This document shows, piece by piece, positions 5,480 through 50,100 of a stretch of DNA of 64,000 nt. The stretch covers positions 148,180,001-148,244,000 of the forward strand of contig CM097882.1 in NCBI GenBank assembly GCA_044892505.1, in the 5' to 3' direction. The notes beneath the pieces are model-generated. The model saw only the letters and a list, made by a program, of their open reading frames with translations, had not been told where the DNA came from and did no database searches. Source of the stretch: Schmidtea nova. Taxonomy: Eukaryota. Within the stretch, counting starts at the first letter, position 1. The number at the start of each line of letters is the position of its first letter. Both the position numbers and the translations under genes were made by a program.

Positions 5480-5869
5480 TGCTGGTGTGTTGGTTGGATG
5501 GACAACTGAGATCATTAAGATTTTATATGTTAGGGTGATCTCGCCAACATAAAAACATTCCCCCGCTGACACCCATGATGTATCCCTAACTACTCATCAT
5601 GTTGGTGTTGTGTCAACGTTGTGAAATGACAAGGCAGGTGAGCAACCTTTCGGCTACTATTCCCTTGTTTATTCACGGGTCCACCACTACCGATAGAAGG
5701 TGTTTGTGGATTTCTTTCGGTCCCTTTATAACGCGCTCCTTCCTTTGCTCTAGGGTAATTTAATTTTAACGTATCTGCAGCTTTTAAATGAATCAGGTTT
5801 TCATTACATTCAATTCTCAAACATTCCACAAGCAAACAAGGCAAGTCAAATCATTCATCTATAATACAT

Positions 5870-6451
5870 TTATTTATAACTTAACAACACGGATGGTCTG
5901 ATTACATTCCATAATTCCTGCTCCGAGAGTCCACTGAGCAGATCGACCTCTATGCCCAGGCGTTCGGCATATGCTCGACGCTCTCTACGTTTCTTCGCTC
6001 CGAGGCGATTCCTTCGCTTTGTCCTTTGAGACCCTTGTGGAATTATTGTGGTTGCTTCAGTAGTTGTAGTTACTGTTGTCTCCTTTTCGGTTTGTGTACT
6101 CGCAGTAACCGCTATCGAGTTTACCCATCGGTTGAAAGTGCTTGCCCGGATCACTGGGCGTAACTGTTCCGTTATGAATTCTTGGGTCGACACCTTGAGA
6201 TAATTCGACAGTTCCAATTTCAACGCTGCGACCTCTCTAGCCTGCTCGTCGGCTACCTGTTCAGCTCGATGCCTCGCTTGTAGAATGGCCTTAACCCTCT
6301 CGGGATTAAACCACGTCGTTTTGACTCTTTGATGTTCATCGCTTAACTGACGTAAGCGGCTCTCAAGGACTCGGGAACGTGCCTTGTGTTCTCGTGCCTC
6401 TTGTTTGTAGTTTCGATTTTGGTTCTCGCTCATATCTGTAAAATGTGACAT
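5870..6451 (-). CDS. LTR-encoded ORF, 193 aa, coiled coil plus Arg-rich segment (3' LTR copy)
   Basis: ATG-initiated; open in both LTRs; contains QRTKRRNRLGAKKRRERR. Confidence 0.55.
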   Translation of the reverse strand: MSHFTDMSENQNRNYKQEAREHKARSRVLESRLRQLSDEHQRVKTTWFNPERVKAILQARHRAEQVADEQAREVAALKLELSNYLKVSTQEFITEQLRPVIRASTFNRWVNSIAVTASTQTEKETTVTTTTEATTIIPQGSQRTKRRNRLGAKKRRERRAYAERLGIEVDLLSGLSEQELWNVIRPSVLLSYK

Positions 6452-6631
6452 TAATTAGGGTATGGGTAATCTGTCTGGTTTTCCAGTCACAGTTTTCTTA
6501 TCAAACAATTGTGCTTCATCCTCATGCTCTTCTCATACATTCGAAACCAAAAATAAAACCCTTTTAAAACGAATACATTTATTTTTCTATTTATAACAGG
6601 TATTCCCTCTCTGAATGTGTCTCTCTCGCGA

Positions 6632-7258
6632 TTAACTGAACGATCGCAACTCCTGATCGGCAGAATTCTCGTCTCGGCGAATTCCAGTTTCGTGGTACAG
6701 TTCTGGTGCTGGGTACCAACTCAATTTATCCCGGTAGATAAATACTTCCCATAGACGAAGATCCTTGGGCTCCGGATGTTGATCCAATGAGACGCTTCCT
6801 GGAGCGTTTGGGTAGACTTGGACTTCCCCAGTGTCGCTACACCGAGGCCTGTCCAGCAGCAAGTATCCGAGTTGGTAAAATGCGTGTCCTGACATCATCC
6901 CTGTGCTTAGCAGCCAGCGGGGTTGATTTGCATCATCCACGAACTGATAGAACCATCGGTCAGATTTCTGTTCGGTAGGGTTCGAGGAGGACACCCAATT
7001 GGCATCTCCTTCCCACCTCAATTGCCACTGGAATGCGCACGCTGGGATGCTAGCAGCCATACTCATGTGGTTTCTCACCCATCGACGCAGGTGTCGACGT
7101 GCTAGTTTGATAATTTGACGTGGAGCTTCCCTCTCTCCTTTGATCTCGAAATTCGCATTAGGCCTGACGACGGAGCGGATGCGCCGTTTCCTTCGGAAGG
7201 TACGATCTTCCATCTTCACGGTTAGTGAGTCTATAGGCTTCCCTAGACAGCTTTCCAT
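6632..7258 (-). CDS. LTR-encoded ORF, 208 aa, basic N-terminus, Trp-rich globular part (3' LTR copy)
   Basis: 627-nt open frame with normal globular composition; open in both LTRs. Confidence 0.55.
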   Translation of the reverse strand: MESCLGKPIDSLTVKMEDRTFRRKRRIRSVVRPNANFEIKGEREAPRQIIKLARRHLRRWVRNHMSMAASIPACAFQWQLRWEGDANWVSSSNPTEQKSDRWFYQFVDDANQPRWLLSTGMMSGHAFYQLGYLLLDRPRCSDTGEVQVYPNAPGSVSLDQHPEPKDLRLWEVFIYRDKLSWYPAPELYHETGIRRDENSADQELRSFS

Positions 7259-8685
7259 TTTGACCGTGTTGCTCGGAGCTGAAGAAGATGTCTAGATTAA
7301 TTGACAGACACTGCTGCTGATCACAACTATATATACCGTTCGACCTACCCGACTTATCGACCAATTCTCCGTAGGCCTCAGCAGATCATTTGTATTCTAC
7401 TAGACAAGTGACTGCGATGTAACGTAGGCCGTGGTTAACGCTTTATTTTGTGAACTAATTCACTCCGCACTTTTCTCAGACTGTTTAGCTACGCTAAATT
7501 TGTATTATTGTTTACGATGTTATTTTTATATTTATTTTTCATCAGCCGTACTCAGTCACTCAACAATTTTCTATCAATGATCATAACCATCAACTATCAA
7601 CGATCATGTTACTTTGGGGAACTCTAACGATCTCTTACCGAGAATACCTTCTAATGTCCATCATTTTATCGGTTCTCAATGCATGTAACTTGTTTATTAC
7701 ATCTCTCGGGGGCTGGATACGTGTGATAGAATGCGCAGTCGACTACTATTACTCCTTGATGCTGTACCCTCCGTCTCTGAATTCATAGGGTCATACGACT
7801 TATGCCTTGCATACTATTATTCTCGTCAACACTCAATTTATCAGCACTGGTGTTACTTGTTATATGTACATGTCCCTTGTCTAGATATCGCCATGATGTA
7901 TACCATTCATACGAGGCTGTCTTTACTTTAATTGAATTTACGATCGCTAGATTTTACTAGATACCCTATGTGCATTCACCCCCTTCCGCTTACCAAATAT
8001 TTAGGAAACTTATGGTCCCGCCGCATCGGTACCTCACATGAAAATGTGTTGCACCGAGAGGCCAAGAATCCGTCAGGCTGTTAGGCCTCCGGAAAATCCT
8101 TATCGATTTTAGCATAGTTACAAATTATAATTATGAGGGTTTAAGATAATAATACAACTCGAATTTACCTTTTATTTCCACTTCCAATCAGATTTCCAAT
8201 ATTTTCTACAAGTTGTCAGTATTTCACACTCACTTACACTTGGTAAAAATAACATTGACAAATACTGATTTGACTCCGGTATTTATACTAAACCGGTGTT
8301 GTTGGTCAGCCAATCAGCATCGAGTGTGTGTGTCTGTTTGGTCATTCTTTTGTGCTTGTCGGCTTTTTGCTGCCTAATTTTACTCAATGATTTGTTTGTT
8401 TAATCATGCGGTAAGTTTATTTTTGTGTGATTTAATTTTTATTTTATTTTGTTTTAGGTCTTCGGTGACGTCCGCCCACCTACTGTCAATTTCAGATTTT
8501 TTTCTGCTTCGCATGAGTGAGTTTTTGAGTTTTATTTTGTTCTGATTACTGCTTTATTTCTTTTAGATGTTGCCGCTCATTTGCTACTTTTTATGCTGGT
8601 AATTTATTTTGTTGTTATTTTTTGTAGCTTTATTTTATTGATTGTATATTATTTTCGGATGCTGCTCGATTTGGCTGGCCCAACA

Positions 8686-8705
8686 TCACTCGGGGTCCCC
8701 TAAAA
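8686..8705 (-). promoter_or_regulatory. Atypical polypurine-tract region (sense TTTTAGGGGACCCCGAGTGA|TGTTGG)
   Basis: Occupies the PPT position just before the 3' LTR, but the only purine run is AGGGGA, within a GGGGACCCC palindrome. Confidence 0.4.
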
Positions 8706-8887
8706 TTGCGTCCCGCAATTACATGCATATACCTACTTCAACATACATAAAAAGTTCGTGACAGAATTCACATTCAAAACCACATAAGGTGGTAGCCTTT
8801 ATACACATTCATACAAAGTCACACATTGTCATTGTCCTGTTTTTATTGTTACACAGTTCAATGTTTCTGGCTCATAGGGGTCGATTT

Positions 8888-9412
8888 TCAGGTCCTTTCA
8901 CTGGTTGACTGCAATTCGTATCGGGCTTGAATTTGTCGCAGATGGCTTCTCATTCTTTGTTGGGTTTTTGCTTCTCTTCTGGCGCATCTACACATTATCG
9001 TTTGTTGTTGTTTGAGGCTTCTGATTCGGTACAGGGTATATGTGATCACGATGATCAGGATGATTGTCAATATTGTCATTGTGACTATTCCAGCGATGAT
9101 CCATCTGTTTCGGATTTCAGATTCGATTTGGGTTTGGCCTTTGATTGGCTTTAGTTGATATTGAAATGTTCTGTGGATTTCTCGGATCTTCTCGATTTGA
9201 TTGAATAGGGTTTGTAAGGGTTTGCGATGATCATGACTGATTCGCATTTGTCGGATTAATTGTTTCAAGTCTTCTCTGACTTCGTTTAGTTGTTTTTCAA
9301 TCTCTTGGGATATCTCGTTTGACAGGGTTCTTTGGATTTCGGTTGTTGAACAGTTCATTATTGTTGTAGTTAACATAATCGTTAGGATTGGTAGGGTTTT
9401 GAGCCAGATCAT
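8888..9412 (-). CDS. Small type-I membrane protein (signal peptide, helical ectodomain, TM helix, basic tail), 174 aa
   Basis: Hydrophobic N-terminus MIWLKTLPILTIMLTTTI; TM WIIAGIVTMTILTIILIIVITYTLY followed by RIRSLK. Confidence 0.75.
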   Translation of the reverse strand: MIWLKTLPILTIMLTTTIMNCSTTEIQRTLSNEISQEIEKQLNEVREDLKQLIRQMRISHDHRKPLQTLFNQIEKIREIHRTFQYQLKPIKGQTQIESEIRNRWIIAGIVTMTILTIILIIVITYTLYRIRSLKQQQTIMCRCARREAKTQQRMRSHLRQIQARYELQSTSERT

Positions 9413-9485
9413 TTCTGATTATTCTACTGATTAATACCTGTTACATCGATTTGTACATTTTTACACACGGATTTTTCGCCTCTTT

Positions 9486-10646
9486 TTACACATCTGTCTC
9501 CTCTGGTTCATGGAACCCTTCATCTTGGAGTTCCATTGATGGTGGTGGTATAAACGGTAACCACACCACTCTACTTCTCCACATTGCAATTTCATCTTGA
9601 TACGTTCGAGAGATTTGTATCTCTTCATCTAACAGATACTCCATATAGTCTGATTGTTCGCTCAGAGTTTCGATTTGTCTTTCCATTTCTTCCATTTTTC
9701 TCTTAAGGGCTTCTACTTCTGTTGGTTCGGTTTCTACTTCTATGGTTTCTTTCTCTGCTTTCAGGGTTATTATCTGCTGTTTCAGTTCCTCGTTTTCTTT
9801 CGTCAAATTCGTTATGTTTTCCTCGTAAGCTCGGTTTGATTCCGCATGTCTTTCTTTCACTGCTTTCAACTCCATTTTCTTTTGAGTCACCACCCCTTGA
9901 TAACCATTTACATCTCTTTCCAGGCTTTCTTTTTCCCTGATCAACTTTTGTCTTTCCGCTTCCTCTTTCTGTCTAATGCCTCGCATTTCTCCATTTATCA
10001 TCTGTATTTGCCATTGCGTTTTCTTTAGTTCCTTTGACTGTTCTCGAATAAATCGCTGTCGTTTTCGACTCCATTCTTTGTTTGTCTGTTCTTGTCGCTT
10101 TCTCTGTTCCAATTCCTCTTTCAATTCGTCTATCTCTTGATACAATTTCCAATCTTCGCTGTGTGCTGTCCTTCTGATTATCTCTTTGGCTTCTTTATAC
10201 ACTCGTTTCGACTCCATCTTCCAATGTCTCGCTTGAGCTTTGATTGCTAGTATTTTTACCTCCATCTTTTCCTCTTGTTTCTCCCTCTCTTCTCTTCGCG
10301 TTTTCATCATGTTTTTGTACTGTTCTGCTTGTTTTCTCATCAATTGATAGGTCTCTTCTATCTTCTGTCGACTTCGTACATTCGTTCCTTTTAGCTTCTC
10401 TATTTGTGTTGTCAGTTGTAGTATCTCTTTATTCACTTCCTCGAATTCTAATTGATATAACTCCATTCGTCTTTCGCATTTTAGTTTCTCGTAGAAATTG
10501 TTTGTCATCACTTCGTGTAATTCCCTGGTTCTTTGTTCCACTTCCACTTTACATCTCCTTTCGATTTCTCTTTCTATTGCTTCTCGTTCGTTCGCCATCT
10601 CGTTTCTCGTTTCATCTTCGATTACATGTTCATTTGCATTTTCCAT
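9486..10646 (-). CDS. Long coiled-coil protein, 386 aa, ends in ETDV
   Basis: 1.16-kb ATG-initiated ORF, E/K/R/Q-rich with heptad character. Confidence 0.8.
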   Translation of the reverse strand: MENANEHVIEDETRNEMANEREAIEREIERRCKVEVEQRTRELHEVMTNNFYEKLKCERRMELYQLEFEEVNKEILQLTTQIEKLKGTNVRSRQKIEETYQLMRKQAEQYKNMMKTRREEREKQEEKMEVKILAIKAQARHWKMESKRVYKEAKEIIRRTAHSEDWKLYQEIDELKEELEQRKRQEQTNKEWSRKRQRFIREQSKELKKTQWQIQMINGEMRGIRQKEEAERQKLIREKESLERDVNGYQGVVTQKKMELKAVKERHAESNRAYEENITNLTKENEELKQQIITLKAEKETIEVETEPTEVEALKRKMEEMERQIETLSEQSDYMEYLLDEEIQISRTYQDEIAMWRSRVVWLPFIPPPSMELQDEGFHEPEETDV

Positions 10647-10735
10647 TCTGTAATTTACAAATTTACACTGGTTATACTATACGTTTATGGTTGTTGTCGA
10701 TTTTTACACTTTATTTACAGGGTCGTTCACTCTGA

Positions 10736-12073
10736 CTACTCTAACCATCCTTTCGTTGACTTCGTGTTCATCACTGTTGTACTTGTTTTCTTTTCGATTT
10801 CCAACTCTACGTATAGGTTGTCGTCGTACAACATTTCCCACATTTTTTGGTGTGGTATGAATTTTGGTTCTCCTGTCGCTAATGAACATTCGGTGGTTGG
10901 TCTTTTGTAAGCTTCGTGCTTACCATCGATTTTAAATATCCTCACGATCGTTTCTTTCGAGATTTTGACCCTCATTATCGCCTTTGTCTCTAGCGGCCAT
11001 TCTAATATATCGTCGTAACCACCTTTACACAACGCAAAGAATAATGACACATGCGTTTCCTTTCCTGATCCATCTCCATTTGGATAAATTCTCATCCGGA
11101 CTTTGTATCCGTTTTTCCACAGATAGAATGGTGGACTTGTTACCGACACTTGACTTCCTGCTTTTGCTGCTGCGAACTTTTCGTTGAAGTTCTTGATTTT
11201 CCATACATATGGTGCAACAGGTAAACTCTCGATATCCTCTGCATCTCGCACCCATATTTGATGTCGTACATTTACCTCCTTTACTAGCGTCTCTATGACT
11301 TTGATTTTCTCCATCATTTTCTCTCTGGTGAGCTCGAATTGCTCTCTCGTTTCCAGTAATAACTCCGTCATTATCCTCTGAGATTCGATTTCTTTTCCCA
11401 GCTTCTGTATGGTTTGTTCCATTCCGTTTAAATTTTCTGTTAACATCTCTGCGTGTTGTACCGTCTCTGTTTCTAAATGCTCTTTCATTTCTTTGCTCGT
11501 TTTCTTTACTACACATCCTTGTTTGCTCCATACGCACTTTCTTGGCCTTGCTTCACATCGTTCCCAATGTTCTCTCAACATCACCTCTTCTCCGGCTTCA
11601 CAATTACTTGGACAAATTCCTCTGAATTTTCCGCACACTTTCTCTTCTGCTACATTGAGATGTTCTGTTTCGATTATCTCTCTTGTCTCTCTTTGTTCAC
11701 AGTATTGACATTCTATTATTTCTGCTTTGCACTCGTTCTTGTGACTTTTCAGCTGCTTGATGGTTATTGTCTGTTGACACTTTTCGCATAGCGCTTTCTT
11801 GTTTTCGCATTTCTCCAGATGTTGTCTTAACTCGATTATTTGTCCTTTCCATTCGCATGGTTGGTTTATACACTCTGTTTTTATCTTCCAGATTTCCTTT
11901 TGGATTGCTTTGTCTGGTTTCGTCTCGTTGATTAGTAGTTTATCGTCACACTCTGGACACTTTCTTGTCTCACTTTCACTGATTATTTGCAATATACACT
12001 TGGTGCACATCCTGCATCCACATTCGGTTTGTCTCGGTTTCAACAGTAAATTTTTACACTTTACACACGTCAC
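10736..12073 (-). CDS. TRAF: TRAF-family protein (RING, TRAF zinc fingers, coiled coil, MATH)
   Basis: RING CVKC...CGCRMCTKC...CPEC; zinc fingers CINQPCEWKG...HLEKC; MATH motifs YVWKIKNF, SPPFY...GYKVRMRIYPNGDG, THVSLFF, DDILEWP. Confidence 0.95.
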   Translation of the reverse strand: MTCVKCKNLLLKPRQTECGCRMCTKCILQIISESETRKCPECDDKLLINETKPDKAIQKEIWKIKTECINQPCEWKGQIIELRQHLEKCENKKALCEKCQQTITIKQLKSHKNECKAEIIECQYCEQRETREIIETEHLNVAEEKVCGKFRGICPSNCEAGEEVMLREHWERCEARPRKCVWSKQGCVVKKTSKEMKEHLETETVQHAEMLTENLNGMEQTIQKLGKEIESQRIMTELLLETREQFELTREKMMEKIKVIETLVKEVNVRHQIWVRDAEDIESLPVAPYVWKIKNFNEKFAAAKAGSQVSVTSPPFYLWKNGYKVRMRIYPNGDGSGKETHVSLFFALCKGGYDDILEWPLETKAIMRVKISKETIVRIFKIDGKHEAYKRPTTECSLATGEPKFIPHQKMWEMLYDDNLYVELEIEKKTSTTVMNTKSTKGWLE

Positions 12074-12238
12074 ATTTACTCCTCATTGTCGATTCTCTCC
12101 TCTAAGAATCTTGATTGTTTGGTAGTCTGCTTCACTTTCTGCTCTCATTCTACAACAATATTTACATCAATTTCCCCATATTTTTGATTTTTTCTGGTTC
12201 TTTATTTACACGTATTTACACAATTTTCCGCTTATTCA

Positions 12239-12589
12239 CTATACATCCTCAGTTGAATCTGGCTCTGGATACACGTCTATTTCATTTACAATCCAGCTCG
12301 TCCAACTATCCGGTATCTCTTCCTCTTCATGTCTCGTTAATCTGTCAATTTCCTCTGCTTGCCAATTGTTTACTTCATTTAATGTTCGGTTCTCGTTCTG
12401 TAATTCGTTTATCTGTATTTGTTGGATCTCGATTTTGTTCATTGCTTCAAAATTACAGTTATAACTTTCGGTTAGTAATTGCGTTTTGGCCGTCAACTGG
12501 CTCTGTAATTCGTTTATTGTTCTGGCTAGCAGGTCACATTGCACTTTCCATCTTGTCATCATCGACATCTCTGTGGTTTCTTGATTCAT
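12239..12589 (-). CDS. Short coiled-coil protein, 116 aa
   Basis: ATG-initiated heptad-rich ORF with TATAAATA at 12651-12644 upstream. Confidence 0.6.
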   Translation of the reverse strand: MNQETTEMSMMTRWKVQCDLLARTINELQSQLTAKTQLLTESYNCNFEAMNKIEIQQIQINELQNENRTLNEVNNWQAEEIDRLTRHEEEEIPDSWTSWIVNEIDVYPEPDSTEDV

Positions 12590-12823
12590 CGTTTTTCTAG
12601 ATTATATACATCATTCTCTTTTTTCTGTTTTTATGTTTTATAATATTTATACCCATACGTATACGGTTATGCATTGGTTTTTACAATATTATTTACACTC
12701 ATATTCCACCCTCTATACAACTATCACTGGTTTTCCTTCGTACAGTTCCTCGTCCTCGATCTGTACCCACATCTCTTCAAAGGGTACAAAACAAGGATAT
12801 AAAGGTAAGTACGGTTTTTTTAA

Positions 12824-12962
12824 TGACTCATAGGTAAGATTTATTTGGATCACTCATTGGTATGGCTCATTGGTATGACTCATCAGTATGACTCATCAGT
12901 ATGACTCATCAGTATGACTCATTGGTATGACTCATCAGTATGACTCATCAGTATGACTCATC
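12824..12962. promoter_or_regulatory. Tandem 13-bp array of AP-1/GCN4-type sites (ATGACTCAT)
   Basis: Seven TGACTCA at 12876, 12889, 12902, 12915, 12928, 12941 and 12954, plus one at 12824. Confidence 0.75.
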
Positions 12963-13109
12963 AACAAATATTAACAAAGACAATGCAATCCATGTGCAAA
13001 GAAACAAAGACATTGCAATCCATGTGCAACGAAACAAAGACTAATGAAATATAATTTTTAATAATAATAATTTTTTGTACAGAGATAAATTGTGTGTGTG
13101 TGTGTGTTT

Positions 13110-13216
13110 AAGACAAATTACTGTACTCATTGAACGCGCGTTTCACGCGCGTTCTTCTTCCTTGTTTTATAAGACAAATCACAGTACTCATTGAACGCGC
13201 GTGAAACGCGCGTTCT
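13110..13216. repeat. 61-bp tandem unit with a perfect 10-bp-stem hairpin, loop inverted between copies
   Basis: GAACGCGCGT-TTC-ACGCGCGTTC (13132-13154) and GAACGCGCGT-GAA-ACGCGCGTTC (13193-13215); runs into an N-gap. Confidence 0.85.
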
Positions 13217-17215: not shown

Positions 17216-17242
17216 GTCAACTAACGCATTTTCGTCATACGA

Positions 17243-17329
17243 TGAGTCATCGATGACGTCATTTATGAGTCATCGGGGGTCATGGATGACTCATCGATGA
17301 CGTCATTTCCTTTGTTCTGCGATGACTCA
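17243..17329. promoter_or_regulatory. Cluster of four AP-1 (TGA[C/G]TCA) and two CRE (TGACGTCA) sites in the ank-polB spacer
   Basis: AP-1 at 17243, 17266, 17287 and 17323; CRE at 17254 and 17298. Confidence 0.7.
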
Positions 17330-17345
17330 TGGTGCACACTTCTGT

Positions 17346-18614: not shown

Positions 18615-18617
18615 TGT

Positions 18618-24761: not shown

Positions 24762-24779
24762 GTTAGACCCTTCTTTTGT

Positions 24780-29632: not shown

Positions 29633-30516
29633 CTCTTCTTCTTCACTACTCTCTGTTTCGTTATCTCTTGATTCGCTTCTTGTTCTGTTTTCACTGACTA
29701 GTTCACTGTCTATCGTTTCTACTTCGTTTTGTACTTCTAGATCCTCTGGGGTTTCTTCTTGATTCTCTTTATTACTCGAATTATCGCTGATCTCTGCTGG
29801 TTTATTCTTTTGTTGCGCTGTTTTATTTCCTGGTCTTGTCTTTTTCGCTGTTTTTCTTTCTTCTTCTGTTAGGATCGCTTCTGTGTTGACCTTTTGTTGC
29901 GCTACTTTAGCTGCTGCTTTTGCCTTTTTTGCTGCTTTTCTTTCTGCTTCTGTTAGGATTGGTATTATACCTGTCCTTGTTTCGCGTTCCGTAATTTTGT
30001 CTATTACTCAACTTCTTATATTCTCAACTGATTTTTCTACTTCGCTTTTGCTTTGCTTCTTCTTCGATTTGGTTCCTTTGATTGCTCTGACTGCTAGATT
30101 GCCTTGATTTGCTTGATTGATTTGTTTCCTTAAAACAAATAATCACTTACACGATACATCCCCGTTATCGTGTTTCTCGTCCCTCTCACGGGTGTAGTCA
30201 TAATTCATGAAGATCCCCATTTTTCCCATTTCCCTTGATTTTAAGTCTATTTAAATTATCTATGCAGTCGTATAAATTATCTATACTTCATCAAATACAC
30301 CAATTACTTTTCCCCAGTTCCCCAATTACTTTGTCGCTCAGCGCTTTTATTATCCCCTTTATTTTCCTCAGGCTTCTCTGGCTCTGAGTTTAAATTTCCC
30401 CTTATCTATCGACTACTCTGTCTCTCGACTACTCACTCGCACTCTTAACTGTGTTAACTACTTCATTTCAACTCTCATCTCTACTCACCTTTAATTTAAC
30501 TGACATCTCTCGTTGG

Positions 30517-30980: not shown

Positions 30981-31307
30981 CCCTATACTTACTCACTTTA
31001 TTTTATTACTCCTCTCTGTATGCATACTTTAACATCACTAGGCCACATAATCAGCTTTACTCGCATTTATCAATACCCAGGTGCGCACCTTTAACTTCCT
31101 CGTTACCAATTTGGTTTCTTTCAACCGTTATTCTTCATTATTCGCTATTCATTTTTACTATTCATCATTTATCCTCATTATCAATTATTCATCTCTATTA
31201 TCGCTTGTTTAACTCGACTATCCGGATAGTTTTGTACTTAATTTAGTCCTCATTTGCCTCAATTCGTCGTCTTTCTCGTGGGCTTTTTACTCCATATCTT
31301 ATTCTGG

Positions 31308-31830
31308 ACGAGAACTACGCTCACAGCTGAGAACTATGCTCACTAACGCGGGCTGCGTTTACTACGAGACTAGGCTCACTGGCGAGAACTACGCTCAATG
31401 ACGAGAACTATGCTCACTAGCAAAACATAGTTGTTACGAGGGTTTTGCTTACTGATGGAAACTCTGTTTGCTCCGGAGATTATGTTCCCTGATGAGAACT
31501 ATGCTCACTGATGGTGACTACAGGAACTTCCTGATGAGAACTAAGCTCACTTTGATGACTATGTTTATTAATGAGAACTCTGCTCACTATTAGGCTTGTG
31601 TTCGCTAACGAGAACCGTGCTCACTATGATGTTGTGTTTTATGACGAGACCTACGCTCACTAAGATGTTATGTTTTATGACGAGACCTATGCTCACTATG
31701 ATGTTATTTTTATGACGAGACCTATGCTCACTATGATGTTAGGTTTTATGCCGAGACCTATGCTCACTATGATGTTATGTGTTATAACGAGACCTATGCT
31801 CACTATGAGACCTAGGCTCACGAACGAGAA
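31308..31830. repeat. Degenerate tandem array (about 15 copies of gaga[a/c]ctatgctcact, 33-34-bp period in the regular part)
   Basis: Recurrent gacgagacctatgctcactatgatgtt units. Confidence 0.85.
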
Positions 31831-32524
31831 CTCGAAATATCATCTCTCAGTGGTTGCATGTGTTTCTTCGGAGATGTTCATCTCTCAGTGGTCACTTATG
31901 CTTCTTCGGAGAATCTATTGTCGCGCTTCGTTAAGTTCTATCTTTCAAGAACTATGGGCAAATCCTTTCTCTTTAGGACCCCCTTTTATTATTTCCTTTC
32001 TTTCAAGGATTTCATTTAACCTCGAGTTTTCCATTTACTCGGCTCATCTACTACACCCCTTTATTCTGTTATCTATTCATCGACTTCTCTACTTGATTTT
32101 ATTTAATGCGAGCTGATAACGTGCCTTTTATCATATACCACATTTCTCTACTCATCTTACTCATTTCCTTGCTTTCTCTCTCTCTTTACTGATCAGTTTT
32201 AACATCCTCTTTTTATAGTTTTTTCTGCGCGCGCCTAAACCTCGTTGAGTTGTCCCTACCTTTCGCCCCAACCAAAATATATAAAAAGATCGCATTGGTC
32301 CACTGATGCACGATGTGGTGATCAATCACACCACAAGAGCTTTCCAATATCCGCGATTGGCCCCTTTCTACACATCTCGGGTAAGTTGATCAGTTGGTTC
32401 CCCCAATGGGTGCTTATCGGACTACTCGTAAGTAGCTCATGATTACTTAGGTCATTTTTACCAAATCATTGTTAAACCCTCATAATTTCAACAACAACTG
32501 TACTTGTTCAAAACTTTATTTCTA

Positions 32525-32983
32525 TTAAAAGTACACTGTTATTTTCTCGGATACGGGAAGGTTGCACATAGGACATCGTTCATTTATTTTACAGTCATTA
32601 CAGAATCGAAAATGCCCACATGGCAACAACATTATCTGTATTTTGTTTATTTCACAGATATAACACGTCAGATACTGTCTCGTATATTCGGTTGTCATTC
32701 TTATCCACTCATCGTGTTTTGTTGTTAACTGTTGTTCTAGCCTGTGGCACTCGATATTCATCTCAGGGTTGTTTAGTCGCTCTTTATACCATTGATATCG
32801 TGTTGCTGTATCCACTGTATTCTTATTCTCACTTAAGCTCATCATCCTTTCAGCTCTTTCTGTGTTGTTTGTCGGTTCATGATATTCTCCTACTTCGAGT
32901 CGTTTTAACTTTCTCATTACTGTTTTTACTGCCTCGTTGTTTGTATCGAAAAACGTTTGCATTTCTTTTATTTTGTTCTCCAT
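32525..32983 (-). CDS. Coiled coil plus C-terminal IAP/MDM2-type C3HC4 RING protein, 152 aa
   Basis: CYICEINKIQIMLLPCGHFRFCNDCKINERCPMC, ending ITVYF; no BIR domain seen. Confidence 0.85.
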   Translation of the reverse strand: MENKIKEMQTFFDTNNEAVKTVMRKLKRLEVGEYHEPTNNTERAERMMSLSENKNTVDTATRYQWYKERLNNPEMNIECHRLEQQLTTKHDEWIRMTTEYTRQYLTCYICEINKIQIMLLPCGHFRFCNDCKINERCPMCNLPVSEKITVYF

Positions 32984-33170
32984 CCCCTGAATGAATTCTC
33001 ATTAATTTCTGTCGATTTTTATTTATTATTTATTATTTCTATTCTACGGTAGCCCTACTGTTCGCTTTCTGTTGTTCTGTTTTGCGTCGTTACTTGCGTA
33101 TCCACCCGTGTTCTTGAATGTCGCCCCGACATGATCATTGTTAGTTGTCTACATACATATCATTTTCATG

Positions 33171-33518: not shown

Positions 33519-33536
33519 ATCCCGGCTGAGCCCCCA
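33519..33536 (-). promoter_or_regulatory. Primer-binding site, tRNA-Pro-like (TGGGGGCTCAGCCGGGAT)
   Basis: Matches the known tRNA-Pro PBS TGGGGGCTCGTCCGGGAT at 16/18; lies 6 nt inside the 5' LTR boundary. Confidence 0.85.
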
Positions 33537-33932
33537 AATTTATGCTGGTGTGTTGGTTGGATGGACAACTGAGATCATTAAGATTTTATATGTTAGGGTG
33601 ATCTCGCCAACATAAAAACATTCCCCCGCTGACACCCATGATGTATCCCTAACTACTCATCATGTTGGTGCTGTGTCAACGTTGTGAAATGACAAGGCAG
33701 GTGAGCAACCTTTCGGCTACTATTCCCTTGTTTATTCACGGGTCCACCACTACCGATAGAAGGTGTTTGTGGATTTCTTTCGGTCCCTTTATAACGCGCT
33801 CCTTCCTTTGCTCTAGGGTAATTTAATTTTAACGTATCTGCAGCTTTTAAATGAATCAGGTTTTCATTACATTCAATTCTCAAACATTCCACAAGCAAAC
33901 AAGGCAAGTCAAATCATTCATCTATAATACAT

Positions 33933-34514
33933 TTATTTATAACTTAACAACACGGATGGTCTGATTACATTCCATAATTCCTGCTCGGAGAGTCCACTGA
34001 GCAGATCGACCTCTATGTCCAGGCGTTCGGCATATGCTCGACGCTCTCTACGTTTCTTCGCTCCGAGGCGATTCCTTCGCTTTGTCCTTTGAGACCCTTG
34101 TGGAATTATTGTGGTTGCTTCAGTAGTTGTAGTTACTGTTGTCTCCTTTTCGGTTTGTGTACTCGCAGTAACCGCTATCGAGTTTACCCATCGGTTGAAA
34201 GTGCTTGCCCGGATCACTGGGCGTAACTGTTCCGTTATGAATTCTTGGGTCGACACCTTGAGATAATTCGACAGTTCCAATTTCAACGCTGCGACCTCTC
34301 TAGCCTGCTCGTCGGCTACCTGTTCAGCTCGATGCCTCGCTTGTAGAATGGCCTTAACCCTCTCGGGATTAAACCACGTCGTTTTGACTCTTTGATGTTC
34401 ATCGCTTAACTGACGTAAGCGGCTCTCAAGGACTCGGGAACGTGCCTTGTGTTCACGTGCCTCTTGTTTGTAGTTTCGATTTTGGTTCTCGCTCATATCT
34501 GTAAAATGTGACAT
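33933..34514 (-). CDS. LTR-encoded ORF, 193 aa (5' LTR copy)
   Basis: Copy of 5870-6451 with one amino-acid difference (G/D). Confidence 0.55.
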   Translation of the reverse strand: MSHFTDMSENQNRNYKQEAREHKARSRVLESRLRQLSDEHQRVKTTWFNPERVKAILQARHRAEQVADEQAREVAALKLELSNYLKVSTQEFITEQLRPVIRASTFNRWVNSIAVTASTQTEKETTVTTTTEATTIIPQGSQRTKRRNRLGAKKRRERRAYAERLDIEVDLLSGLSEQELWNVIRPSVLLSYK

Positions 34515-34694
34515 TAATTAGGGTATGGGTAATCTGTCTGGTTTTCCAGTCACAGTTTTCTTATCAAACAATTGTGCTTCATCCTCATGCTCTTCTCATA
34601 CATTCGAAACCAAAAATAAAACCCTTTTAAAACGAATACATTTATTTTTCTATTTATAACAGGTATTCCCTCTCTGAATGTGTCTCTCTCGCGA

Positions 34695-35321
34695 TTAACT
34701 GAACGATCGCAACTCCTGATCGGCAGAATTCTCGTCTCGGCGAATTCCAGTTTCGTGGTACAGTTCTGGTGCTGGGTACCAACTCAATTTATCCCGGTAG
34801 ATAAATACTTCCCATAGACGAAGATCCTTGGGCTCCGGATGTTGATCCAATGAGACGCTTCCTGGAGCGTTTGGGTAGACTTGGACTTCCCCAGTGTCGC
34901 TACACCGAGGCCTGTCCAGCAGCAAGTATCCGAGTTGGTATAATGCGTGTCCTGACATCATCCCTGTGCTTAGCAGCCAGCGGGGTTGATTTGCATTATC
35001 CACGAACTGATAGAACCATCGGTCAGATTTCTGTTCGGTAGGGTTCGAGGAGGACACCCAATTGGCATCTCCTTCCCACCTCAATTGCCACTGGAATGCG
35101 CACGCTGGGATGCTAGCAGCCATACTCATGTGGTTTCTCACCCATCGACGCAGGTGTCGACGTGCTAGTTTGATAATTTGACGTGGAGCTTCCCTCTCTC
35201 CTTTGATCTCGAAATTCGCATTAGGCCTGACGACGGAGCGGATGCGCCGTTTCCTTCGGAAGGTACGATCTTCCATCTTCACGGTTAGTGAGTCTATAGG
35301 CTTCCCTAGACAGCTTTCCAT
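34695..35321 (-). CDS. LTR-encoded ORF, 208 aa (5' LTR copy)
   Basis: Copy of 6632-7258 with two amino-acid differences (D/N, F/L). Confidence 0.55.
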   Translation of the reverse strand: MESCLGKPIDSLTVKMEDRTFRRKRRIRSVVRPNANFEIKGEREAPRQIIKLARRHLRRWVRNHMSMAASIPACAFQWQLRWEGDANWVSSSNPTEQKSDRWFYQFVDNANQPRWLLSTGMMSGHALYQLGYLLLDRPRCSDTGEVQVYPNAPGSVSLDQHPEPKDLRLWEVFIYRDKLSWYPAPELYHETGIRRDENSADQELRSFS

Positions 35322-36342
35322 TTTGACCGTGTTGCTCGGAGCTGAAGAAGATGTCTAGATTAATTGACAGACACTGCTGCTGATCACAACTATATATACC
35401 GTTCGACCTACCCGACTTATCGACCAATTCTCCGTAGGCCTCAGCAGATCATTTGTATTCTACTAGACAAGTGACTGCGATGTAACGTAGGCCGTGGTTA
35501 ACGCTTTATTTTGTGAACTAATTCACTCCGCACTTTTCTCAGACTGTTTAGCTACGCTAAATTTGTATTATTGTTTACGATGTTATTTTTATATTTATTT
35601 TTCATCAGCCGTACTCAGTCACTCAACAATTTTCTATCAATGATCATAACCATCAACTATCAACGATCATGTTACTTTGGGGAACTCTAACGATCTCTTA
35701 CCGAGAATACCTTCTAATGTCCATCATTTTATCGGTTCTCAATGCATGTAACTTGTTTATTACATCTCTCGGGGGCTGGATACGTGTGATAGAATGCGCA
35801 GTCGACTACTATTACTCCTTGATGCTGTACCCTCCGTCTCTGAATTCATAGGGTCATACGACTTATGCCTTGCATACTATTATTCTCGTCAACACTCAAT
35901 TTATCAGCACTGGTGTTACTTGTTATATGTACATGTCCCTTGTCTAGATATCGCCATGATGTATACCATTCATACGAGGCTGTCTTTACTTTAATTGAAT
36001 TTACGATCGCTAGATCTTACTAGATACCCTATGTGCATTCACCCCTTTCCGCTTACCAAATATTTAGGAAACCTATGGTCCCGCCGCATCGGTACCTCAC
36101 ATGAAAATGTGTTGCACCGAGAGGCCAAGAATCCGTCAGGCTGTTAGGCCTCCGGAAAATCCTTATCGATTTTAGCATAGTTACAAATTATAATTATGAG
36201 GGTTTAAGATAATAATACAACTCGAATTTACCTTTTATTTCCACTTCCAATCAGATTTCCAATATTTTCTACAAGTTGTCAGTATTTCACACTCACTTAC
36301 ACTTGGTAAAAATAACATTGACAAATACTGATTTGACTCCGG

Positions 36343-36350
36343 TATTTATA
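36343..36350 (-). promoter_or_regulatory. Candidate LTR TATA box TATAAATA (copy at 8280-8287)
   Basis: About 400 nt inside the sense start of the LTR, flanked by a CCGGT/ACCGG inverted repeat. A CCAAT motif lies upstream; TCAGT and a GTAAGTG donor (36300-36294) lie downstream. Confidence 0.5.
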
Positions 36351-38166
36351 CTAAACCGGTGTTGTTGGTCAGCCAATCAGCATCGAGCGTGTGTGTCTGT
36401 TTGGTCATTCTTTTGTGCTTGTCGGCTTTTTGCTGCCTAATTTTACTCAATGATTTGTTTGTTTAATCATGCGGTAAGTTTATTTTTGTGTGATTTAATT
36501 TTTATTTTATTTTGTTTTAGGTCTTCGGTGACGTCCGCCCACCTACTGTCAATTTCAGATTTTTTTCTGCTTCGCATGAGTGAGTTTTTGAGTTTTATTT
36601 TGTTCTGATTACTGCTTTATTTCTTTTAGATGTTGCCGCTCATTTGCTACTTTTTATGCTGGTAATTTATTTTGTTATTTTTTGTAGCTTTATTTTATTG
36701 ATTGTATATTATTTTCGGATGCTGCTCGATTTGGCTGGCCCAACACAGGTAACTTGCAAGTAGTTAATTCAAAATACACGATAACGCCAAATAACAAAGT
36801 AAAAATATAACACAATAGGATGAATAAACAAGGATAAAAAAAATTTTAAAATCACCAACCTAGTAGGTATACAATCCCGAATTTCATAAGACTGATAATC
36901 ACACTATAAAGAAAAATTTAGTAATAATTTGATTTTTTTCGACTTTTACTTTCTTTTAAAATTTTAATATTTAGTTTTTCAATAATAAGAGCATATGAAA
37001 TTAATAAGTAAAAACCACAATCCTGTGTGTAGGAAAACAATCAATTTGAAATAAGCCTGATGAAAATAATATATATTCAGTATTGACATTGATGGCATCT
37101 TTGACAGCCTATCCCGTTGATTTTTATTGATTGTGCTGGGATTCGGCACTGTTTGCACATTACACATATTGTGTTTGGGATTCGATGGTTTTTGGTTGAA
37201 TTCTTTATTGGTTTCACTCTGTACAAACAATTGCGGATTTTAATTCTCATCCATTAGACCGACATTGGAAAATTCATTAACCTGACTCATATTGCAGCCA
37301 CTGAAAATCGAAGACTCATTAGAAATGTTTAAGAACGAGAATTGTTGGAGATTGTTTTGAAATTGTTGAAGTAAATGAGAATTTGCCATTCCAAACGGAG
37401 TACATAACTAAGATGAAGACGAAAGAATTGTCGTATTCTATGATTGATGATTGTTATTGACACGATCAGATAGTTTATAAGTATTCGGTTCAGATAGCTT
37501 CTTTTCACTCAGTATCTCCACAGATCTCGGATTCATCACAACGTTTGGATTTGAAAATATTTCATTTGACTTCTTTTTTGATTTTGAATTAAAAATAGTT
37601 AGTTCTTGTTGGATCATGTTGGATTTATTTGAAAAAAGTATCTCAGAAAAAGTAATTATTAAAACAAAGCTATTTAAATCTTCCATTCAATAATTATTTA
37701 ATAAATTAATTAATTAAAAAGAGAAATTTATAATTTAAGGCACTACACTGTTTAAACAACCCAAAACTCATTTTAAAAATTCAAATAAAAGAATTTCAAA
37801 AAATATGGGAAAAGAGAAAAAAACAAACATTATTTATTTATAAAGAAGACCGTAGTAAAAAATGCGTACAAAACAATTCATCAATTAAATCAGTAATAAT
37901 ACAGAGGAATGAGACATTCGTTATTAGTTCAATCGAGAAATTTCTCGTATTTGGTTTACATAACATTTTCGGCATAATAATTTGATATTAGCTTCTGAGC
38001 GATCAGTTGCCCATACAAAACAATTGGACTCGTTTGACAATAATCTTAAACAATTCTAAAATATAGACAAGATGATTATAATCTCATTGTAAATAAACAT
38101 TTTAAACACAGAAATGCTTATTAAATTTTGAAAAGAAGCACTGTAACCGTATAATTACAATTGTAA

Positions 38167-50098: not shown

Positions 50099-50100
50099 AA

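What the first reader, a model, noticed from the sequence alone, without database searches (positions are those of the whole stretch)
5480..36745. A 31-kb retrovirus-like element with the gene kit of a large DNA virus
Seen: one TSD-flanked LTR unit, with LTRs differing at only about 0.3% of sites, holds at least nine internal genes: RING, gag, Bcl-2-like, env-pol-ankyrin, polB, TRAF, two coiled-coil ORFs and a membrane protein. It also has LTR ORFs. Established: typical Ty3/gypsy elements are 5-10 kb; the size precedents are plant Ogre elements and planarian Burro elements. Inference: this is a recently active, enveloped giant retroelement that manipulates host death and immune signalling and carries its own DNA polymerase. 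I do not know this combination from any described retroelement.
Basis: partly seen in the sequence, partly recalled or inferred. Interest (0 to 1): 0.96.

Follow-up and report, generated by a model that had tools for sequence, protein, structure and literature searches.

The report
Burro-type giant retroelement with borrowed polB
This is a real 31-kb retrovirus-like element of a giant type already described in planarian flatworms (Burro); the one apparently new feature is a recently acquired, truncated DNA polymerase gene from a Maverick-type DNA transposon.

Summary
Window 5480-36745 is one minus-strand LTR element of 31,266 bp, with 3.2-kb LTRs (10 mismatches and one 3-nt gap), TG..CA ends and a 4-bp duplication (CAGG). 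Tools confirm the RING ORF, gag, a class-III fusion glycoprotein in frame ahead of PR-RT-RNaseH-IN-ankyrin, polB, a TRAF-like gene, two coiled-coil ORFs, a one-pass membrane ORF and two non-random LTR ORFs. The "Bcl-2-like" call has only weak support.

The combination is not undescribed. Published accounts of planarian Burro/GYPSM1 elements (PMC6431247) already report size over 30 kb, gag-CCHC, BCL2-like, env in frame between gag and pol, ankyrin, MATH/TRAF, and the idea of interference with apoptosis and ubiquitin pathways.

The polB is real: 59% identical to Maverick/adintovirus protein-primed PolBs, with every conserved residue kept in the part present. It lacks about 330 N-terminal residues. 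It sits in a roughly 4.4-kb block of foreign base composition that also contains the assembly gap and is bounded by AP-1-like repeat arrays. I read it as a recent pick-up, not an old core gene.

This copy's long polyprotein frame is interrupted four times. I could not identify the host or find other copies.

The parts
5480..36745 (-). Whole LTR element, 31,266 bp; internal region 8686-33542 (24.9 kb)
   Evidence: Self-BLAST LTR pair. All large ORFs are on the minus strand. GC is about 40% against about 25% in the flanks.
5476..5479 (.). Target-site duplication CAGG (left copy); the right copy is at 36746-36749
33543..36745 (-). Upstream (5') LTR in element orientation, 3203 nt, TG..CA ends
5480..8685 (-). 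Downstream (3') LTR, 3206 nt, 99.6% identical to the other LTR
34698..35354 (-). LTR ORF A (219 codons; twin copy at 6635-7291); no family match
   Evidence: shuffle test
33936..34517 (-). LTR ORF B (194 codons; twin copy at 5873-6454); no family match
33519..33536 (-). Primer-binding-site-like 18-mer starting TGG, 6 nt from the LTR; the matching tRNA was not identified
   Evidence: Sequence read. No tRNA gene in the window for comparison.
32528..32998 (-). RING-finger ORF (157 codons) in the leader, upstream of gag
   Evidence: Pfam zf-C3HC4_3, E 5e-9
31307..31912 (-). Tandem repeats in the leader (19-, 36- and 38-nt units)
17349..30007 (-). gag-to-ankyrin polyprotein region (about 4,300 codons). 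It is interrupted by one frame change and three in-frame stops, and is listed as one part.
   Evidence: No canonical slippery heptamer where the frames overlap.
29126..29413 (-). gag capsid-like domain (Retrotrans_gag)
   Evidence: Pfam E 1.6e-5, above the curated cutoff
28688..28858 (-). CCHC zinc knuckles (nucleocapsid-like)
   Evidence: Pfam zf-CCHC E 1e-10; weak PDB nucleocapsid hits
24790..25300 (-). Status inconclusive; bounds approximate.
   Evidence: No sequence hit anywhere. Low-confidence models. Non-significant Foldseek hits, all Bcl-xL. GGW motif.
22836..24686 (-). Envelope-type class III fusion glycoprotein domain with a C-terminal membrane anchor, in the pol frame upstream of protease
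   Evidence: Pfam Monjiviricetes_fusion E 1.8e-55 and 1.1e-11; hydrophobic anchor
22014..22286 (-). Aspartic protease
   Evidence: Pfam RVP
20874..21350 (-). Reverse transcriptase
   Evidence: Pfam RVT_1 E 9e-37
20298..20687 (-). RNase H
   Evidence: Pfam RT_RNaseH and RT_RNaseH_2
19419..19973 (-). Integrase (H2C2 zinc domain plus core)
   Evidence: Pfam Integrase_H2C2 and rve
17397..18596 (-). Ankyrin-repeat region following integrase in the same frame
   Evidence: Pfam Ank_2 E 1.6e-18 and 9e-7
12850..17300 (-). Compositionally foreign block (approximate bounds): polB, its AT-rich 3' flank, the assembly gap and further repeats
   Evidence: Sliding skew; third-codon-position composition
17233..17330 (-). 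Array of ATGA(G/C)TCAT and TGACGTCA (AP-1/CRE-like) units at the upstream edge of the block, just before polB
14393..17269 (-). polB: uninterrupted 959-codon ORF of the Maverick/adintovirus protein-primed PolB type (exonuclease plus polymerase). It lacks about 330 N-terminal residues. The first ATG is at 17194.
   Evidence: 138 of 138 conserved columns kept
13217..14112 (.). Assembly gap (N, estimated length). It lies in non-coding repeat DNA inside the foreign block. It was not filled or looked up.
12823..13216 (-). Repeat region at the downstream edge of the block. It holds a ~60-nt unit with an internal palindrome that abuts the gap, a 30-nt repeat, and 8 copies of a 13-nt TGATGAGTCATAC unit. 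A TATAAATA follows near 12650.
12242..12601 (-). 120-codon charged (coiled-coil-type) ORF
10739..12082 (-). TRAF-like gene (RING, TRAF zinc finger, MATH domain). The RING begins upstream of the first in-frame ATG.
   Evidence: Pfam MATH_2 E 4e-27 and others. About 25% identity to cellular TRAF2/3/5..
9489..10676 (-). 396-codon ORF, 50% charged residues (coiled-coil-type); no family match
8891..9418 (-). 176-codon ORF with one predicted membrane-spanning segment
   Evidence: only weak sub-threshold Pfam hits

Best explanation
The interval is one full-length, minus-strand copy of a Burro-type giant Ty3/gypsy endogenous retrovirus.

How it works (inferred from the domains, not shown here): it spreads as an LTR retroelement. 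That means transcription from the LTR, tRNA-primed reverse transcription, and integration by its integrase, which left the 4-bp duplication. Its long polyprotein frame carries gag, a possible Bcl-2-like part, a class III (rhabdovirus-G-like) fusion glycoprotein, PR-RT-RNaseH-IN and ankyrin repeats. Separate accessory ORFs (RING, TRAF-like, coiled-coil, membrane, LTR ORFs) share the element's A-rich composition, so they are long-standing residents. They most plausibly act on host ubiquitin, NF-kB and cell-death signalling. Arrays of AP-1/CRE-like motifs followed by a TATA-like box suggest internal promoters for the 3' accessory genes.

The polB is a 5'-truncated protein-primed PolB derived from a Maverick/adintovirus-type element. 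It sits in a roughly 4.4-kb compositionally foreign block inserted into or next to an AP-1-like repeat array. It arrived recently, and nothing here shows it is part of the replication mechanism. I cannot tell from this window whether it was picked up before this copy integrated (so that it travelled with the element) or was inserted afterwards.

This copy is young but not intact: its polyprotein frame has four interruptions.
For: Structure: LTR pair, TG..CA ends, duplication and PBS-like site.

Domains.

Match to the published Burro description (PMC6431247): size over 30 kb, gag with CCHC, env in frame between gag and PR with hits to mononegavirus fusion glycoproteins, ankyrin, MATH/TRAF, and RING-type and coiled-coil motifs.

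polB:
- E=0 and 59% identity over about 900 residues to PolBs that sit in ordinary Mavericks (A32-like ATPase, rve integrase). 33% identity to a named adintovirus PolB.
- No other Maverick gene is present in the element.
- Third-position A/T skew is -0.17 for polB, against +0.34 to +0.64 for every other internal ORF and -0.12 to +0.02 for three Maverick polBs.
- The skew shifts sharply at about 17300 and about 12850.
- 12 of the window's 13 ATGAGTCAT sites fall in two clusters at exactly these two edges, where 0.7 sites are expected for the whole window.
- 138 of 138 family-conserved columns are kept, as expected for a recent arrival.

Relatives at 43-49% pol identity carry different cargo behind pol, so this position is a variable cargo zone.
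Against: - The host was not identified and no Burro reference sequence was available, so 'Burro-type' rests on architecture and the literature, not on identity or phylogeny.
- dUTPase and BIR, reported for Burro1, were not detected.
- TRAF is a separate downstream gene here, not part of the polyprotein.
- Several features are what a domesticated gene would look like rather than a random insertion. The polB block is co-oriented with all other genes, lands exactly between ORFs, keeps an uninterrupted ORF that begins at a conserved Met, and has its own AP-1/CRE-like array. An integral role is therefore not excluded.
- No other copy of the family could be examined.
Confidence: 0.75

Rival explanations
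1. One reading: polB is an integral, functional part of the element's kit. A giant retroelement would then use its own B-family polymerase/exonuclease, for example for second-strand synthesis or proofreading of a 28-kb genome.
For: - Uninterrupted 959-codon ORF with all exonuclease and polymerase motifs kept.
- Same strand as all other genes, in an intergenic slot, preceded by an AP-1/CRE-like array like the one before the next accessory gene.
- Two relatives carry a DEDDh exonuclease gene at the same position behind pol. That hints at a recurring preference for nucleic-acid enzymes there.
Against: - polB is the only internal gene without the element's compositional signature, so it has not shared the element's long-term history.
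- It lacks the N-terminal third of its Maverick homologues.
- Conservation of motifs is equally explained by recency.
- No relative in the databases has polB inside its LTRs. In L003 the adjacency arises because the LTR element is inserted into a Maverick's polB.
- The published Burro description does not mention a polB.
Confidence: 0.12
2. The polB block, or the join across the gap, is an assembly artefact. A Maverick-derived sequence would have been wrongly threaded into the element at repeat arrays, or two copies of the family would have been scaffolded together.
For: - The assembly gap lies inside the foreign block.
- The block is bounded by similar short-repeat arrays, and a repeat unit abuts the gap. 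These are typical places for assembly errors.
- The gap length is only an estimate.
Against: - The ankyrin-to-polB junction lies in uninterrupted sequence. Maverick homologues have coding sequence, not repeats, at the corresponding point, so there is no shared repeat to mis-join on.
- Both halves carry near-identical LTRs in the same orientation with matching 4-bp flanks.
- Genes on both sides of the gap share strand, and the genes outside the block share composition.
Confidence: 0.12
3. The element is not a Burro in the strict sense. It would belong to a wider, mostly unnamed clade of Ty3/gypsy elements with an in-frame class III env that is common in aquatic metagenomes, and its host need not be a planarian.
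For: - The nearest pol relatives, all from metagenome assemblies, reach only 43-49% identity. They share the env-PR-RT-RH-IN fusion, ankyrin tails and variable cargo.
- dUTPase and BIR were not found.
- The host was not identified.
Against: - The size class, the 3-kb LTRs and the specific set of gag-CCHC, env in frame, ankyrin, TRAF/MATH, RING and coiled-coil motifs match what is published for Burro and for nothing else in the literature searched.
- The AT-rich flanks (about 75% A+T) fit planarian genomes.
Confidence: 0.25

Closest known systems
Burro / GYPSM1 giant gypsy-like LTR retrotransposons of planarians (Jurka 2007; Grohme et al. 2018; Arkhipova & Yushenova 2019, PMC6431247)
   Same: - Total length over 30 kb with an internal region of about 25 kb.
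- gag with a Retrotrans_gag motif and CCHC knuckles.
- env homologous to mononegavirus fusion glycoproteins, placed in frame between gag and PR.
- PR-RT-RH-IN followed by ankyrin repeats.
- MATH/TRAF, RING-type and coiled-coil motifs, and a BCL2-like motif reported just upstream of env.
- Accessory ORFs that in some members are polyprotein sub-domains instead.
- The same proposed role in apoptosis and ubiquitin pathways.
   Different: - TRAF is a complete separate gene downstream of pol here.
- A RING ORF sits upstream of gag.
- dUTPase and BIR were not detected.
- Bcl-2-likeness is unproven.
- A Maverick-type polB block is present, which the published description does not mention.
- Sequence identity to Burro1-4 could not be measured.
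Maverick/Polinton elements and adintoviruses (protein-primed PolB)
   Same: The polB ORF is a clear homologue: 59% identity to PolBs in metagenomic Mavericks and 33% to a coral adintovirus PolB, with all exonuclease and polymerase motifs. Those Mavericks also carry Bcl-2, RING and TBP accessory genes.
   Different: Only the polymerase gene is present. It lacks about 330 N-terminal residues. There is no Maverick integrase, packaging ATPase, protease, capsid gene or terminal inverted repeat. It lies inside an LTR element.
Unnamed metagenomic relatives (loci L003, L004, L007, L008 from ENA assembly ERZ25039515)
   Same: 43-49% pol identity, the same env-PR-RT-RH-IN fusion, gag with CCHC, ankyrin tails in some, and LTR-bounded elements with a variable cargo zone behind pol.
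   Different: They are mostly about 15-16 kb with short LTRs (about 300-400 nt); L007 exceeds 20 kb. Their cargo is an ISG20-like exonuclease or unknown ORFs. None has polB, TRAF or RING inside its LTRs.
Errantiviruses (insect gypsy-type endogenous retroviruses) and other env-capturing LTR elements
   Same: They are Ty3/gypsy backbones that acquired a viral fusion glycoprotein.
   Different: Errantivirus env is a separate ORF downstream of pol and is of the baculovirus F type. Here env is a class III Monjiviricetes-type protein in the pol frame, upstream of protease, and the element is three to four times larger.
Complex retroviruses and foamy-like fish endogenous retroviruses with accessory ORFs
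   Same: They carry accessory genes beyond gag-pol-env, with coding sequence reaching into the LTR. Here there are also candidate internal promoters.
   Different: They belong to a different reverse-transcriptase lineage (Retroviridae), are much smaller (17 kb or less), and have no DNA-polymerase cargo.

Membership tests
Ty3/gypsy (Metaviridae) LTR retroelement | Two direct LTRs with TG..CA ends, flanked by a short target-site duplication | tested here: met
   3.2-kb LTRs at 99.6% identity, with CAGG on both sides
Ty3/gypsy (Metaviridae) LTR retroelement | pol domain order PR-RT-RNaseH-IN | tested here: met
   RVP, RVT_1, RT_RNaseH, Integrase_H2C2 and rve, in that order in one frame
Ty3/gypsy (Metaviridae) LTR retroelement | gag with a capsid-like domain and CCHC nucleocapsid knuckles | tested here: met
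Ty3/gypsy (Metaviridae) LTR retroelement | tRNA primer-binding site next to the 5' LTR and a polypurine tract before the 3' LTR | tested here: inconclusive
   An 18-nt TGG-initiated site lies 6 nt from the LTR, but the tRNA was not identified. The stretch before the 3' LTR is only weakly purine-rich.
Ty3/gypsy (Metaviridae) LTR retroelement | RT/IN groups with Ty3/gypsy in a phylogeny | tested here: inconclusive
   The best named hits are Ty3/gypsy-type polyproteins at 36-42% identity. No tree was built.
Burro (planarian giant gypsy-like elements) | Total length over 30 kb, internal region up to about 25 kb | tested here: met
   31,266 bp in total, 24.9 kb internal, compared with PMC6431247
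Burro (planarian giant gypsy-like elements) | env-like fusion glycoprotein in frame between gag and protease, related to mononegavirus glycoproteins | tested here: met
   Pfam Monjiviricetes_fusion E 2e-55, in the pol frame upstream of RVP
Burro (planarian giant gypsy-like elements) | Extra host-type motifs: ankyrin after IN, MATH/TRAF, RING-type zinc fingers, Smc-like coiled coil | tested here: met
   Their positions differ from Burro1: TRAF and RING are separate ORFs here.
Burro (planarian giant gypsy-like elements) | BCL2-like motif upstream of env | tested here: inconclusive
   No sequence-level hit. Only non-significant Bcl-xL fold hits on a low-confidence model, plus a GGW motif.
Burro (planarian giant gypsy-like elements) | dUTPase between PR and RT, and a BIR domain (reported for Burro1) | tested here: not met
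   No PF00692 or BIR hit, even at E up to 1 on the PR-RT linker
Burro (planarian giant gypsy-like elements) | One giant ORF1 polyprotein (about 4,900-5,100 aa) from gag through pol | tested here: inconclusive
   A region of about 4,300 codons from gag to ankyrin is present, but this copy has one frame change and three in-frame stops. No slippery site supports programmed frameshifting.
Burro (planarian giant gypsy-like elements) | Sequence identity to the Burro1-4/GYPSM1 reference sequences | not testable with these tools
   Repbase sequences and the Grohme et al. paper are not held. The protein databases hold nothing closer than 49%.
Burro (planarian giant gypsy-like elements) | Host is a dugesiid planarian | not testable with these tools
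   Host not identified. The roughly 75% A+T flanks are consistent with it.
Maverick/Polinton/adintovirus | [quoted passage not shown] | tested here: met
   This applies to the gene only, and its N-terminal third is missing.
Maverick/Polinton/adintovirus | Maverick-type integrase, A32-like packaging ATPase, protease, capsid genes | tested here: not met
   tblastn with every ORF of the neighbouring Mavericks fetched at that point (L001, L002, plus those in L003) found only polB in the element
Maverick/Polinton/adintovirus | Terminal inverted repeats around the unit | tested here: not met
   Self-BLAST on both strands shows no inverted repeat around 12.8-17.3 kb
Errantivirus | env as a separate ORF3 downstream of pol, baculovirus F-type | tested here: not met
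   env lies upstream of protease in the pol frame and matches a different fusion-protein family

The most novel reading that the evidence does not exclude
A lineage of giant Burro-type retroelements uses the slot behind pol to collect nucleic-acid enzymes: a Maverick PolB (exonuclease plus polymerase) here, and an ISG20-like DEDDh exonuclease in two relatives. It then travels with them and uses them, either to raise the fidelity or processivity of DNA synthesis for a 25-30 kb retro-genome (a parallel to the proofreading exonuclease of large RNA viruses), or to trim excess cDNA and avoid innate sensing.
Probability: 0.1. Interest if true: 0.85.

Novelty: new variant of a known kind. Interest (0 to 1): 0.42.

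Why it matters
The main result is a correction. The striking gene kit is not a new kind of element. It is the already published Burro architecture, including the env gene in frame between gag and pol and the apoptosis and ubiquitin accessory domains.

What remains of interest is narrower:
- It is a clean example of a DNA-transposon or virus polymerase gene sitting between the LTRs of a retroelement.
- A compositional clock (the A-rich third-position bias shared by all resident genes but absent from polB) separates old cargo from new.
- Relatives carry an interferon-type exonuclease in the same slot.

If surveys of other copies showed that these enzymes are kept and travel with the elements, that would bear on how retroelements exceed the usual 10-kb size limit and on gene flow between Mavericks and endogenous retroviruses.

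Tried and rejected
- Host identification failed. An exact-protein lookup of an LTR ORF found nothing. There are no tRNA or Rfam hits in the window. The flanking ORFs give only transposon fragments. TRAF's nearest homologues are only about 25% identical and come from scattered animal groups.
- Other copies of the family could not be found. The nearest PolB is 59% identical and the nearest pol 49%, so the source genome is evidently not in the protein collections. A 23-mer from the ankyrin/polB junction has no match in metagenome contigs. PolB has no relative in the viral contig collection.
- I first thought L003 (env-pol followed by polB on the same strand) might be a second polB-carrying retroelement. 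I rejected this. Its 3' LTR ends exactly where polB homology begins, and the downstream genes are syntenic with Mavericks, so there the LTR element is inserted into a Maverick.
- Short PolBs of about 800 residues (P0026, P0029) might have been retroelement-borne. Their contigs are ordinary Mavericks or transposon-rich DNA.
- Bcl-2 tests gave nothing significant: Pfam at E up to 1, the PDB sequence search, a full phmmer search of 1.84 billion representatives (0 hits), comparison with a Maverick Bcl-2 ORF, two AlphaFold runs (both low confidence) and Foldseek.
- Programmed -1 frameshifting between gag and the next frame: there is no canonical slippery heptamer in the overlap.
- The Grohme et al. 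2018 paper and the primer table of PMC8532177 are not held, so no Burro sequence could be compared.

Full report
**Observation.** Self-comparison of the window gives one long direct repeat pair, 5480-8685 and 33543-36745. It aligns over 3206 columns at 99.6% identity, with 10 mismatches and one 3-nt gap. Each repeat starts with TG and ends with CA, and CAGG lies immediately outside both ends. The unit has about 40% G+C against about 25% in the flanks. All large ORFs lie on the minus strand. On that strand an 18-nt sequence beginning TGG lies 6 nt inside the upstream LTR, where a tRNA primer-binding site belongs.

**The gap, tested first.** N occupies 13217-14112. No claimed gene is read across it. 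The polB ORF ends at a stop 278 nt before the gap, and the next ORF begins about 600 nt beyond it. Both flanks are AT-rich non-coding DNA. On the far side, a ~60-nt unit with an internal palindrome starts right at the gap edge, which is the kind of sequence that breaks assemblies. Frame continuity is therefore not an issue. Physical continuity cannot be proven from the window. It is supported by matching orientation, near-identical LTRs and the matching 4-bp flanks.

**Gene content.** In element orientation, the Pfam scans give this order:
- LTR
- RING ORF (zf-C3HC4_3, E 5e-9)
- leader tandem repeats
- gag (Retrotrans_gag plus CCHC knuckles)
- an all-helical stretch
- a fusion glycoprotein of the Monjiviricetes class III type (E 2e-55) with a membrane anchor
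- protease, RT, RNase H, integrase and ankyrin repeats
- polB
- the gap
- a 120-codon charged ORF
- a TRAF-like gene (RING, TRAF zinc finger, MATH; MATH_2 E 4e-27)
- a 396-codon ORF with 50% charged residues
- a 176-codon ORF with one membrane segment
- LTR

Each LTR has two sense-strand ORFs of 219 and 194 codons. Only 2 of 2000 shuffles produced one frame that long and none produced two. The ORFs are therefore not chance, although they match no family.

**State of this copy.** The region from gag to ankyrin (about 4,300 codons) is not one ORF. It has four interruptions:
- one change of frame between the gag part and the helical stretch
- one in-frame stop between the helical stretch and env
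- one in-frame stop inside env
- one in-frame stop between integrase and ankyrin

No canonical slippery heptamer lies where the two frames overlap, so programmed frameshifting has no support. The RING finger of the TRAF gene starts upstream of its first in-frame ATG. That implies an upstream exon, a non-AUG start or one frameshift at its extreme 5' end. polB has no internal interruption.

**Bcl-2-like.** This is the only gene name I could not verify. There is no Pfam hit even at E up to 1, no PDB sequence hit, and no hit at all in 1.84 billion representative proteins. Two single-sequence AlphaFold models were poor, with pLDDT 46-48. The model is all-helical, and its top ~24 Foldseek matches are all Bcl-xL, but at E 0.4-1. 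The stretch ends in a GGW motif that aligns with the C-terminal GAW of a Maverick Bcl-2 ORF. The literature reports a BCL2-like motif at this position in Burro elements. The call is plausible but unproven.

**What it is.** Arkhipova and Yushenova (PMC6431247), summarising Jurka 2007 and Grohme et al. 2018, describe the planarian Burro/GYPSM1 elements as follows:
- gypsy-like, over 30 kb, with up to 25 kb internal
- gag with Retrotrans_gag and two or three CCHC knuckles
- a BCL2-like motif
- an env homologous to mononegavirus fusion glycoproteins, placed in frame between gag and pol (called the first such case)
- PR-RT-RH-IN and ankyrin
- MATH/TRAF, which in one species is a separate accessory ORF
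- RING-type and Smc-like motifs

The authors suggest that these elements are proviruses that tinker with apoptosis and ubiquitination. The differences here are a separate full TRAF gene downstream of pol, a RING ORF upstream of gag, no detectable dUTPase or BIR, and polB. I could not measure identity to Burro1-4, because the sequences and the original paper are not held. I also could not identify the host. Membership is therefore architectural.

The nearest pol relatives in the databases are 43-49% identical and come from metagenome assemblies. They share the env-pol fusion, ankyrin tails and variable cargo.

**polB.**
- The 959-codon ORF matches proteins carrying PF03175 at E=0 and 59% identity over about 900 residues. 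It is 33% identical to a named coral adintovirus PolB.
- The contigs of the nearest homologues are ordinary Mavericks, with an A32-like ATPase, an rve integrase and accessory Bcl-2, RING and TBP genes. One short-PolB contig is transposon-rich DNA without those Maverick genes.
- The window's protein aligns to residues ~333-1232 of a 1242-residue homologue, so about 330 N-terminal residues are missing.
- Of 147 alignment columns conserved at 95% or more among 94 homologues, all 138 in the part present are kept. The nine lost all lie in the missing N-terminal part.
- No other Maverick gene, and no inverted terminal repeat, is present in the element.

**polB is recent cargo.** Third-codon-position composition separates it from everything else. 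RING, gag, the helical stretch, env, pol, ankyrin, the 120-codon ORF, TRAF, the 396-codon ORF and the membrane ORF all have A/T skew of +0.34 to +0.64. polB has -0.17. Three Maverick polBs from other contigs have -0.12 to +0.02.

A sliding window shows the A-rich signature stopping at about 17300 and resuming at about 12850. The foreign block therefore spans about 4.4 kb at the estimated gap length, and it contains the assembly gap. Its two edges coincide with two clusters of ATGAGTCAT (AP-1-like) units. These hold 12 of the window's 13 sites, where 0.7 are expected for the whole window. The upstream cluster also holds two TGACGTCA sites. The downstream cluster is followed by a TATAAATA and the next ORF.

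My reading is that an AP-1-type internal promoter array was the point at which a 5'-truncated Maverick polB was acquired. TRAF, RING and the other accessory genes are compositionally native, so they are old residents. polB is new. Its perfect motif conservation is what recency predicts and does not by itself show selection.

**What cannot be decided here.** Three scenarios remain open:
- The block was acquired before this copy integrated, so that it travelled between the LTRs.
- The block was inserted into the resident copy afterwards.
- The block is an assembly error.

Several points favour a real and possibly pre-integration acquisition. The block has the same orientation as all other genes, it sits in an intergenic slot in a region that is mostly coding, its ORF starts at a conserved Met, and the junction lies in uninterrupted sequence where Mavericks have coding sequence rather than repeats. 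Caution is warranted because the gap lies inside the block, repeats lie at both edges, and no second copy is available. My estimates are:
- about 0.8 that polB really lies in this copy
- about 0.45 that the element lineage moves with it
- about 0.1 that it has a role in the element's replication

**Relatives.** L003 looked like a second case of env-pol followed by polB. However, its 3' LTR ends where polB homology begins, and the genes beyond are syntenic with Mavericks. There an LTR element sits inside a Maverick's polB, which at least shows that the two element types meet physically.

L008 (15.5 kb between LTRs) and L003 each carry, directly behind pol, an ORF with an RNase_T/DEDDh exonuclease domain. 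The hits are at or above Pfam's cutoff (32.8 and 24.8 bits against 24). The two ORFs are homologous to each other (E 7e-21), and L008's is closest to ISG20L2 and ISG20 in the PDB. L007 is a relative of more than 20 kb with ankyrin and a SUMO-like accessory ORF. The position behind pol is thus a variable cargo zone, and twice it holds an exonuclease. This is the basis of the speculative novel reading.

**Literature on polB in LTR elements.** Four full-text searches combining LTR/retroelement, Burro, Maverick/adintovirus and polB or DNA polymerase terms found no description of such a combination. The library is incomplete, so this is absence of evidence only.

**Verdict.** The interpretation that it is an undescribed kind of element is wrong, because it is a Burro-type giant retroelement. 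The polB is genuine and, as far as I could find, not reported for such elements. It is truncated, compositionally foreign, recent, and entangled with an assembly gap. Interest is moderate.

Noticed in passing
L008:19559-21610 and L003:13230-14726: Two LTR-bounded relatives (43-45% pol identity to the window's element) carry an ISG20/ISG20L2-like DEDDh exonuclease ORF directly behind pol. The hits are Pfam RNase_T at or above the cutoff and PDB 7yw5 at 8e-12, and the two ORFs are homologous to each other at E 7e-21. An interferon-type exonuclease as retroelement cargo seems worth a separate look.
   Followed up: partly
L003:2-396, 15964-16355 and 16320-22869: An LTR element of about 16 kb from this clade is inserted into the polB gene of a Maverick. 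Its LTR ends where polB homology starts (at about residue 190), and syntenic Maverick genes follow. This shows that the two element types meet physically in nature.
   Followed up: yes
window 45405-51894: This is a second GC-rich transposon on the plus strand. It has a 1060-codon RT-RNaseH-IN ORF (53% identical to a gene in L001), an upstream ORF with a weak IS1595/Merlin-type DDE hit, and a 465-codon ORF with no match. Unusually, the unit is bounded by ~100-nt inverted repeats (92% identical) rather than direct ones.
   Followed up: partly
window 17233-17330 and 12823-12961: There are two arrays of AP-1-like ATGAGTCAT units, and the first also holds CRE-like TGACGTCA. Each lies just upstream of an accessory gene and at an edge of the foreign block. 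The second is followed by TATAAATA near 12650. They are candidate internal promoters or enhancers.
   Followed up: partly
window 11990-12082: The RING finger of the TRAF-like gene begins before the first in-frame ATG, and the nearest upstream ATG is in another frame. The 120-codon ORF just upstream is in the same frame as TRAF, so a spliced two-exon gene is conceivable.
   Followed up: no
window 33936-35354 and 5873-7291: Each 3.2-kb LTR holds two sense-strand ORFs (219 and 194 codons). They are far longer than shuffled sequence gives (2 of 2000 shuffles for one, 0 of 2000 for two). They are the most GC-rich part of the element and have no detectable homologues in the libraries scanned.
   Followed up: partly
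L001, L002, L006: The Mavericks that hold the nearest polB homologues carry their own small accessory genes: Bcl-2 (PF00452), a RING of the same zf-C3HC4_3 type as the window's leader ORF, and TBP. Mavericks and Burro-type elements thus draw on a similar pool of host-interference genes.
   Followed up: no
L004:17034-24564 and L008:2334-5753: In two metagenome contigs the retroelement is joined to bacterial-type genes (luciferase-like monooxygenase, Mnh antiporter, MacB/ABC efflux, TetR). This is either a chimeric assembly or a host with bacterial-derived DNA. It was not resolved.
   Followed up: no
window 38170-38436; 4215-4742; 53010-54548: The AT-rich flanks contain a DDE_1 transposase fragment (Pfam E 1e-4) and two short direct-repeat pairs (222 nt at 93% and 180 nt at 99%). 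They are probably further transposon debris.
   Followed up: no
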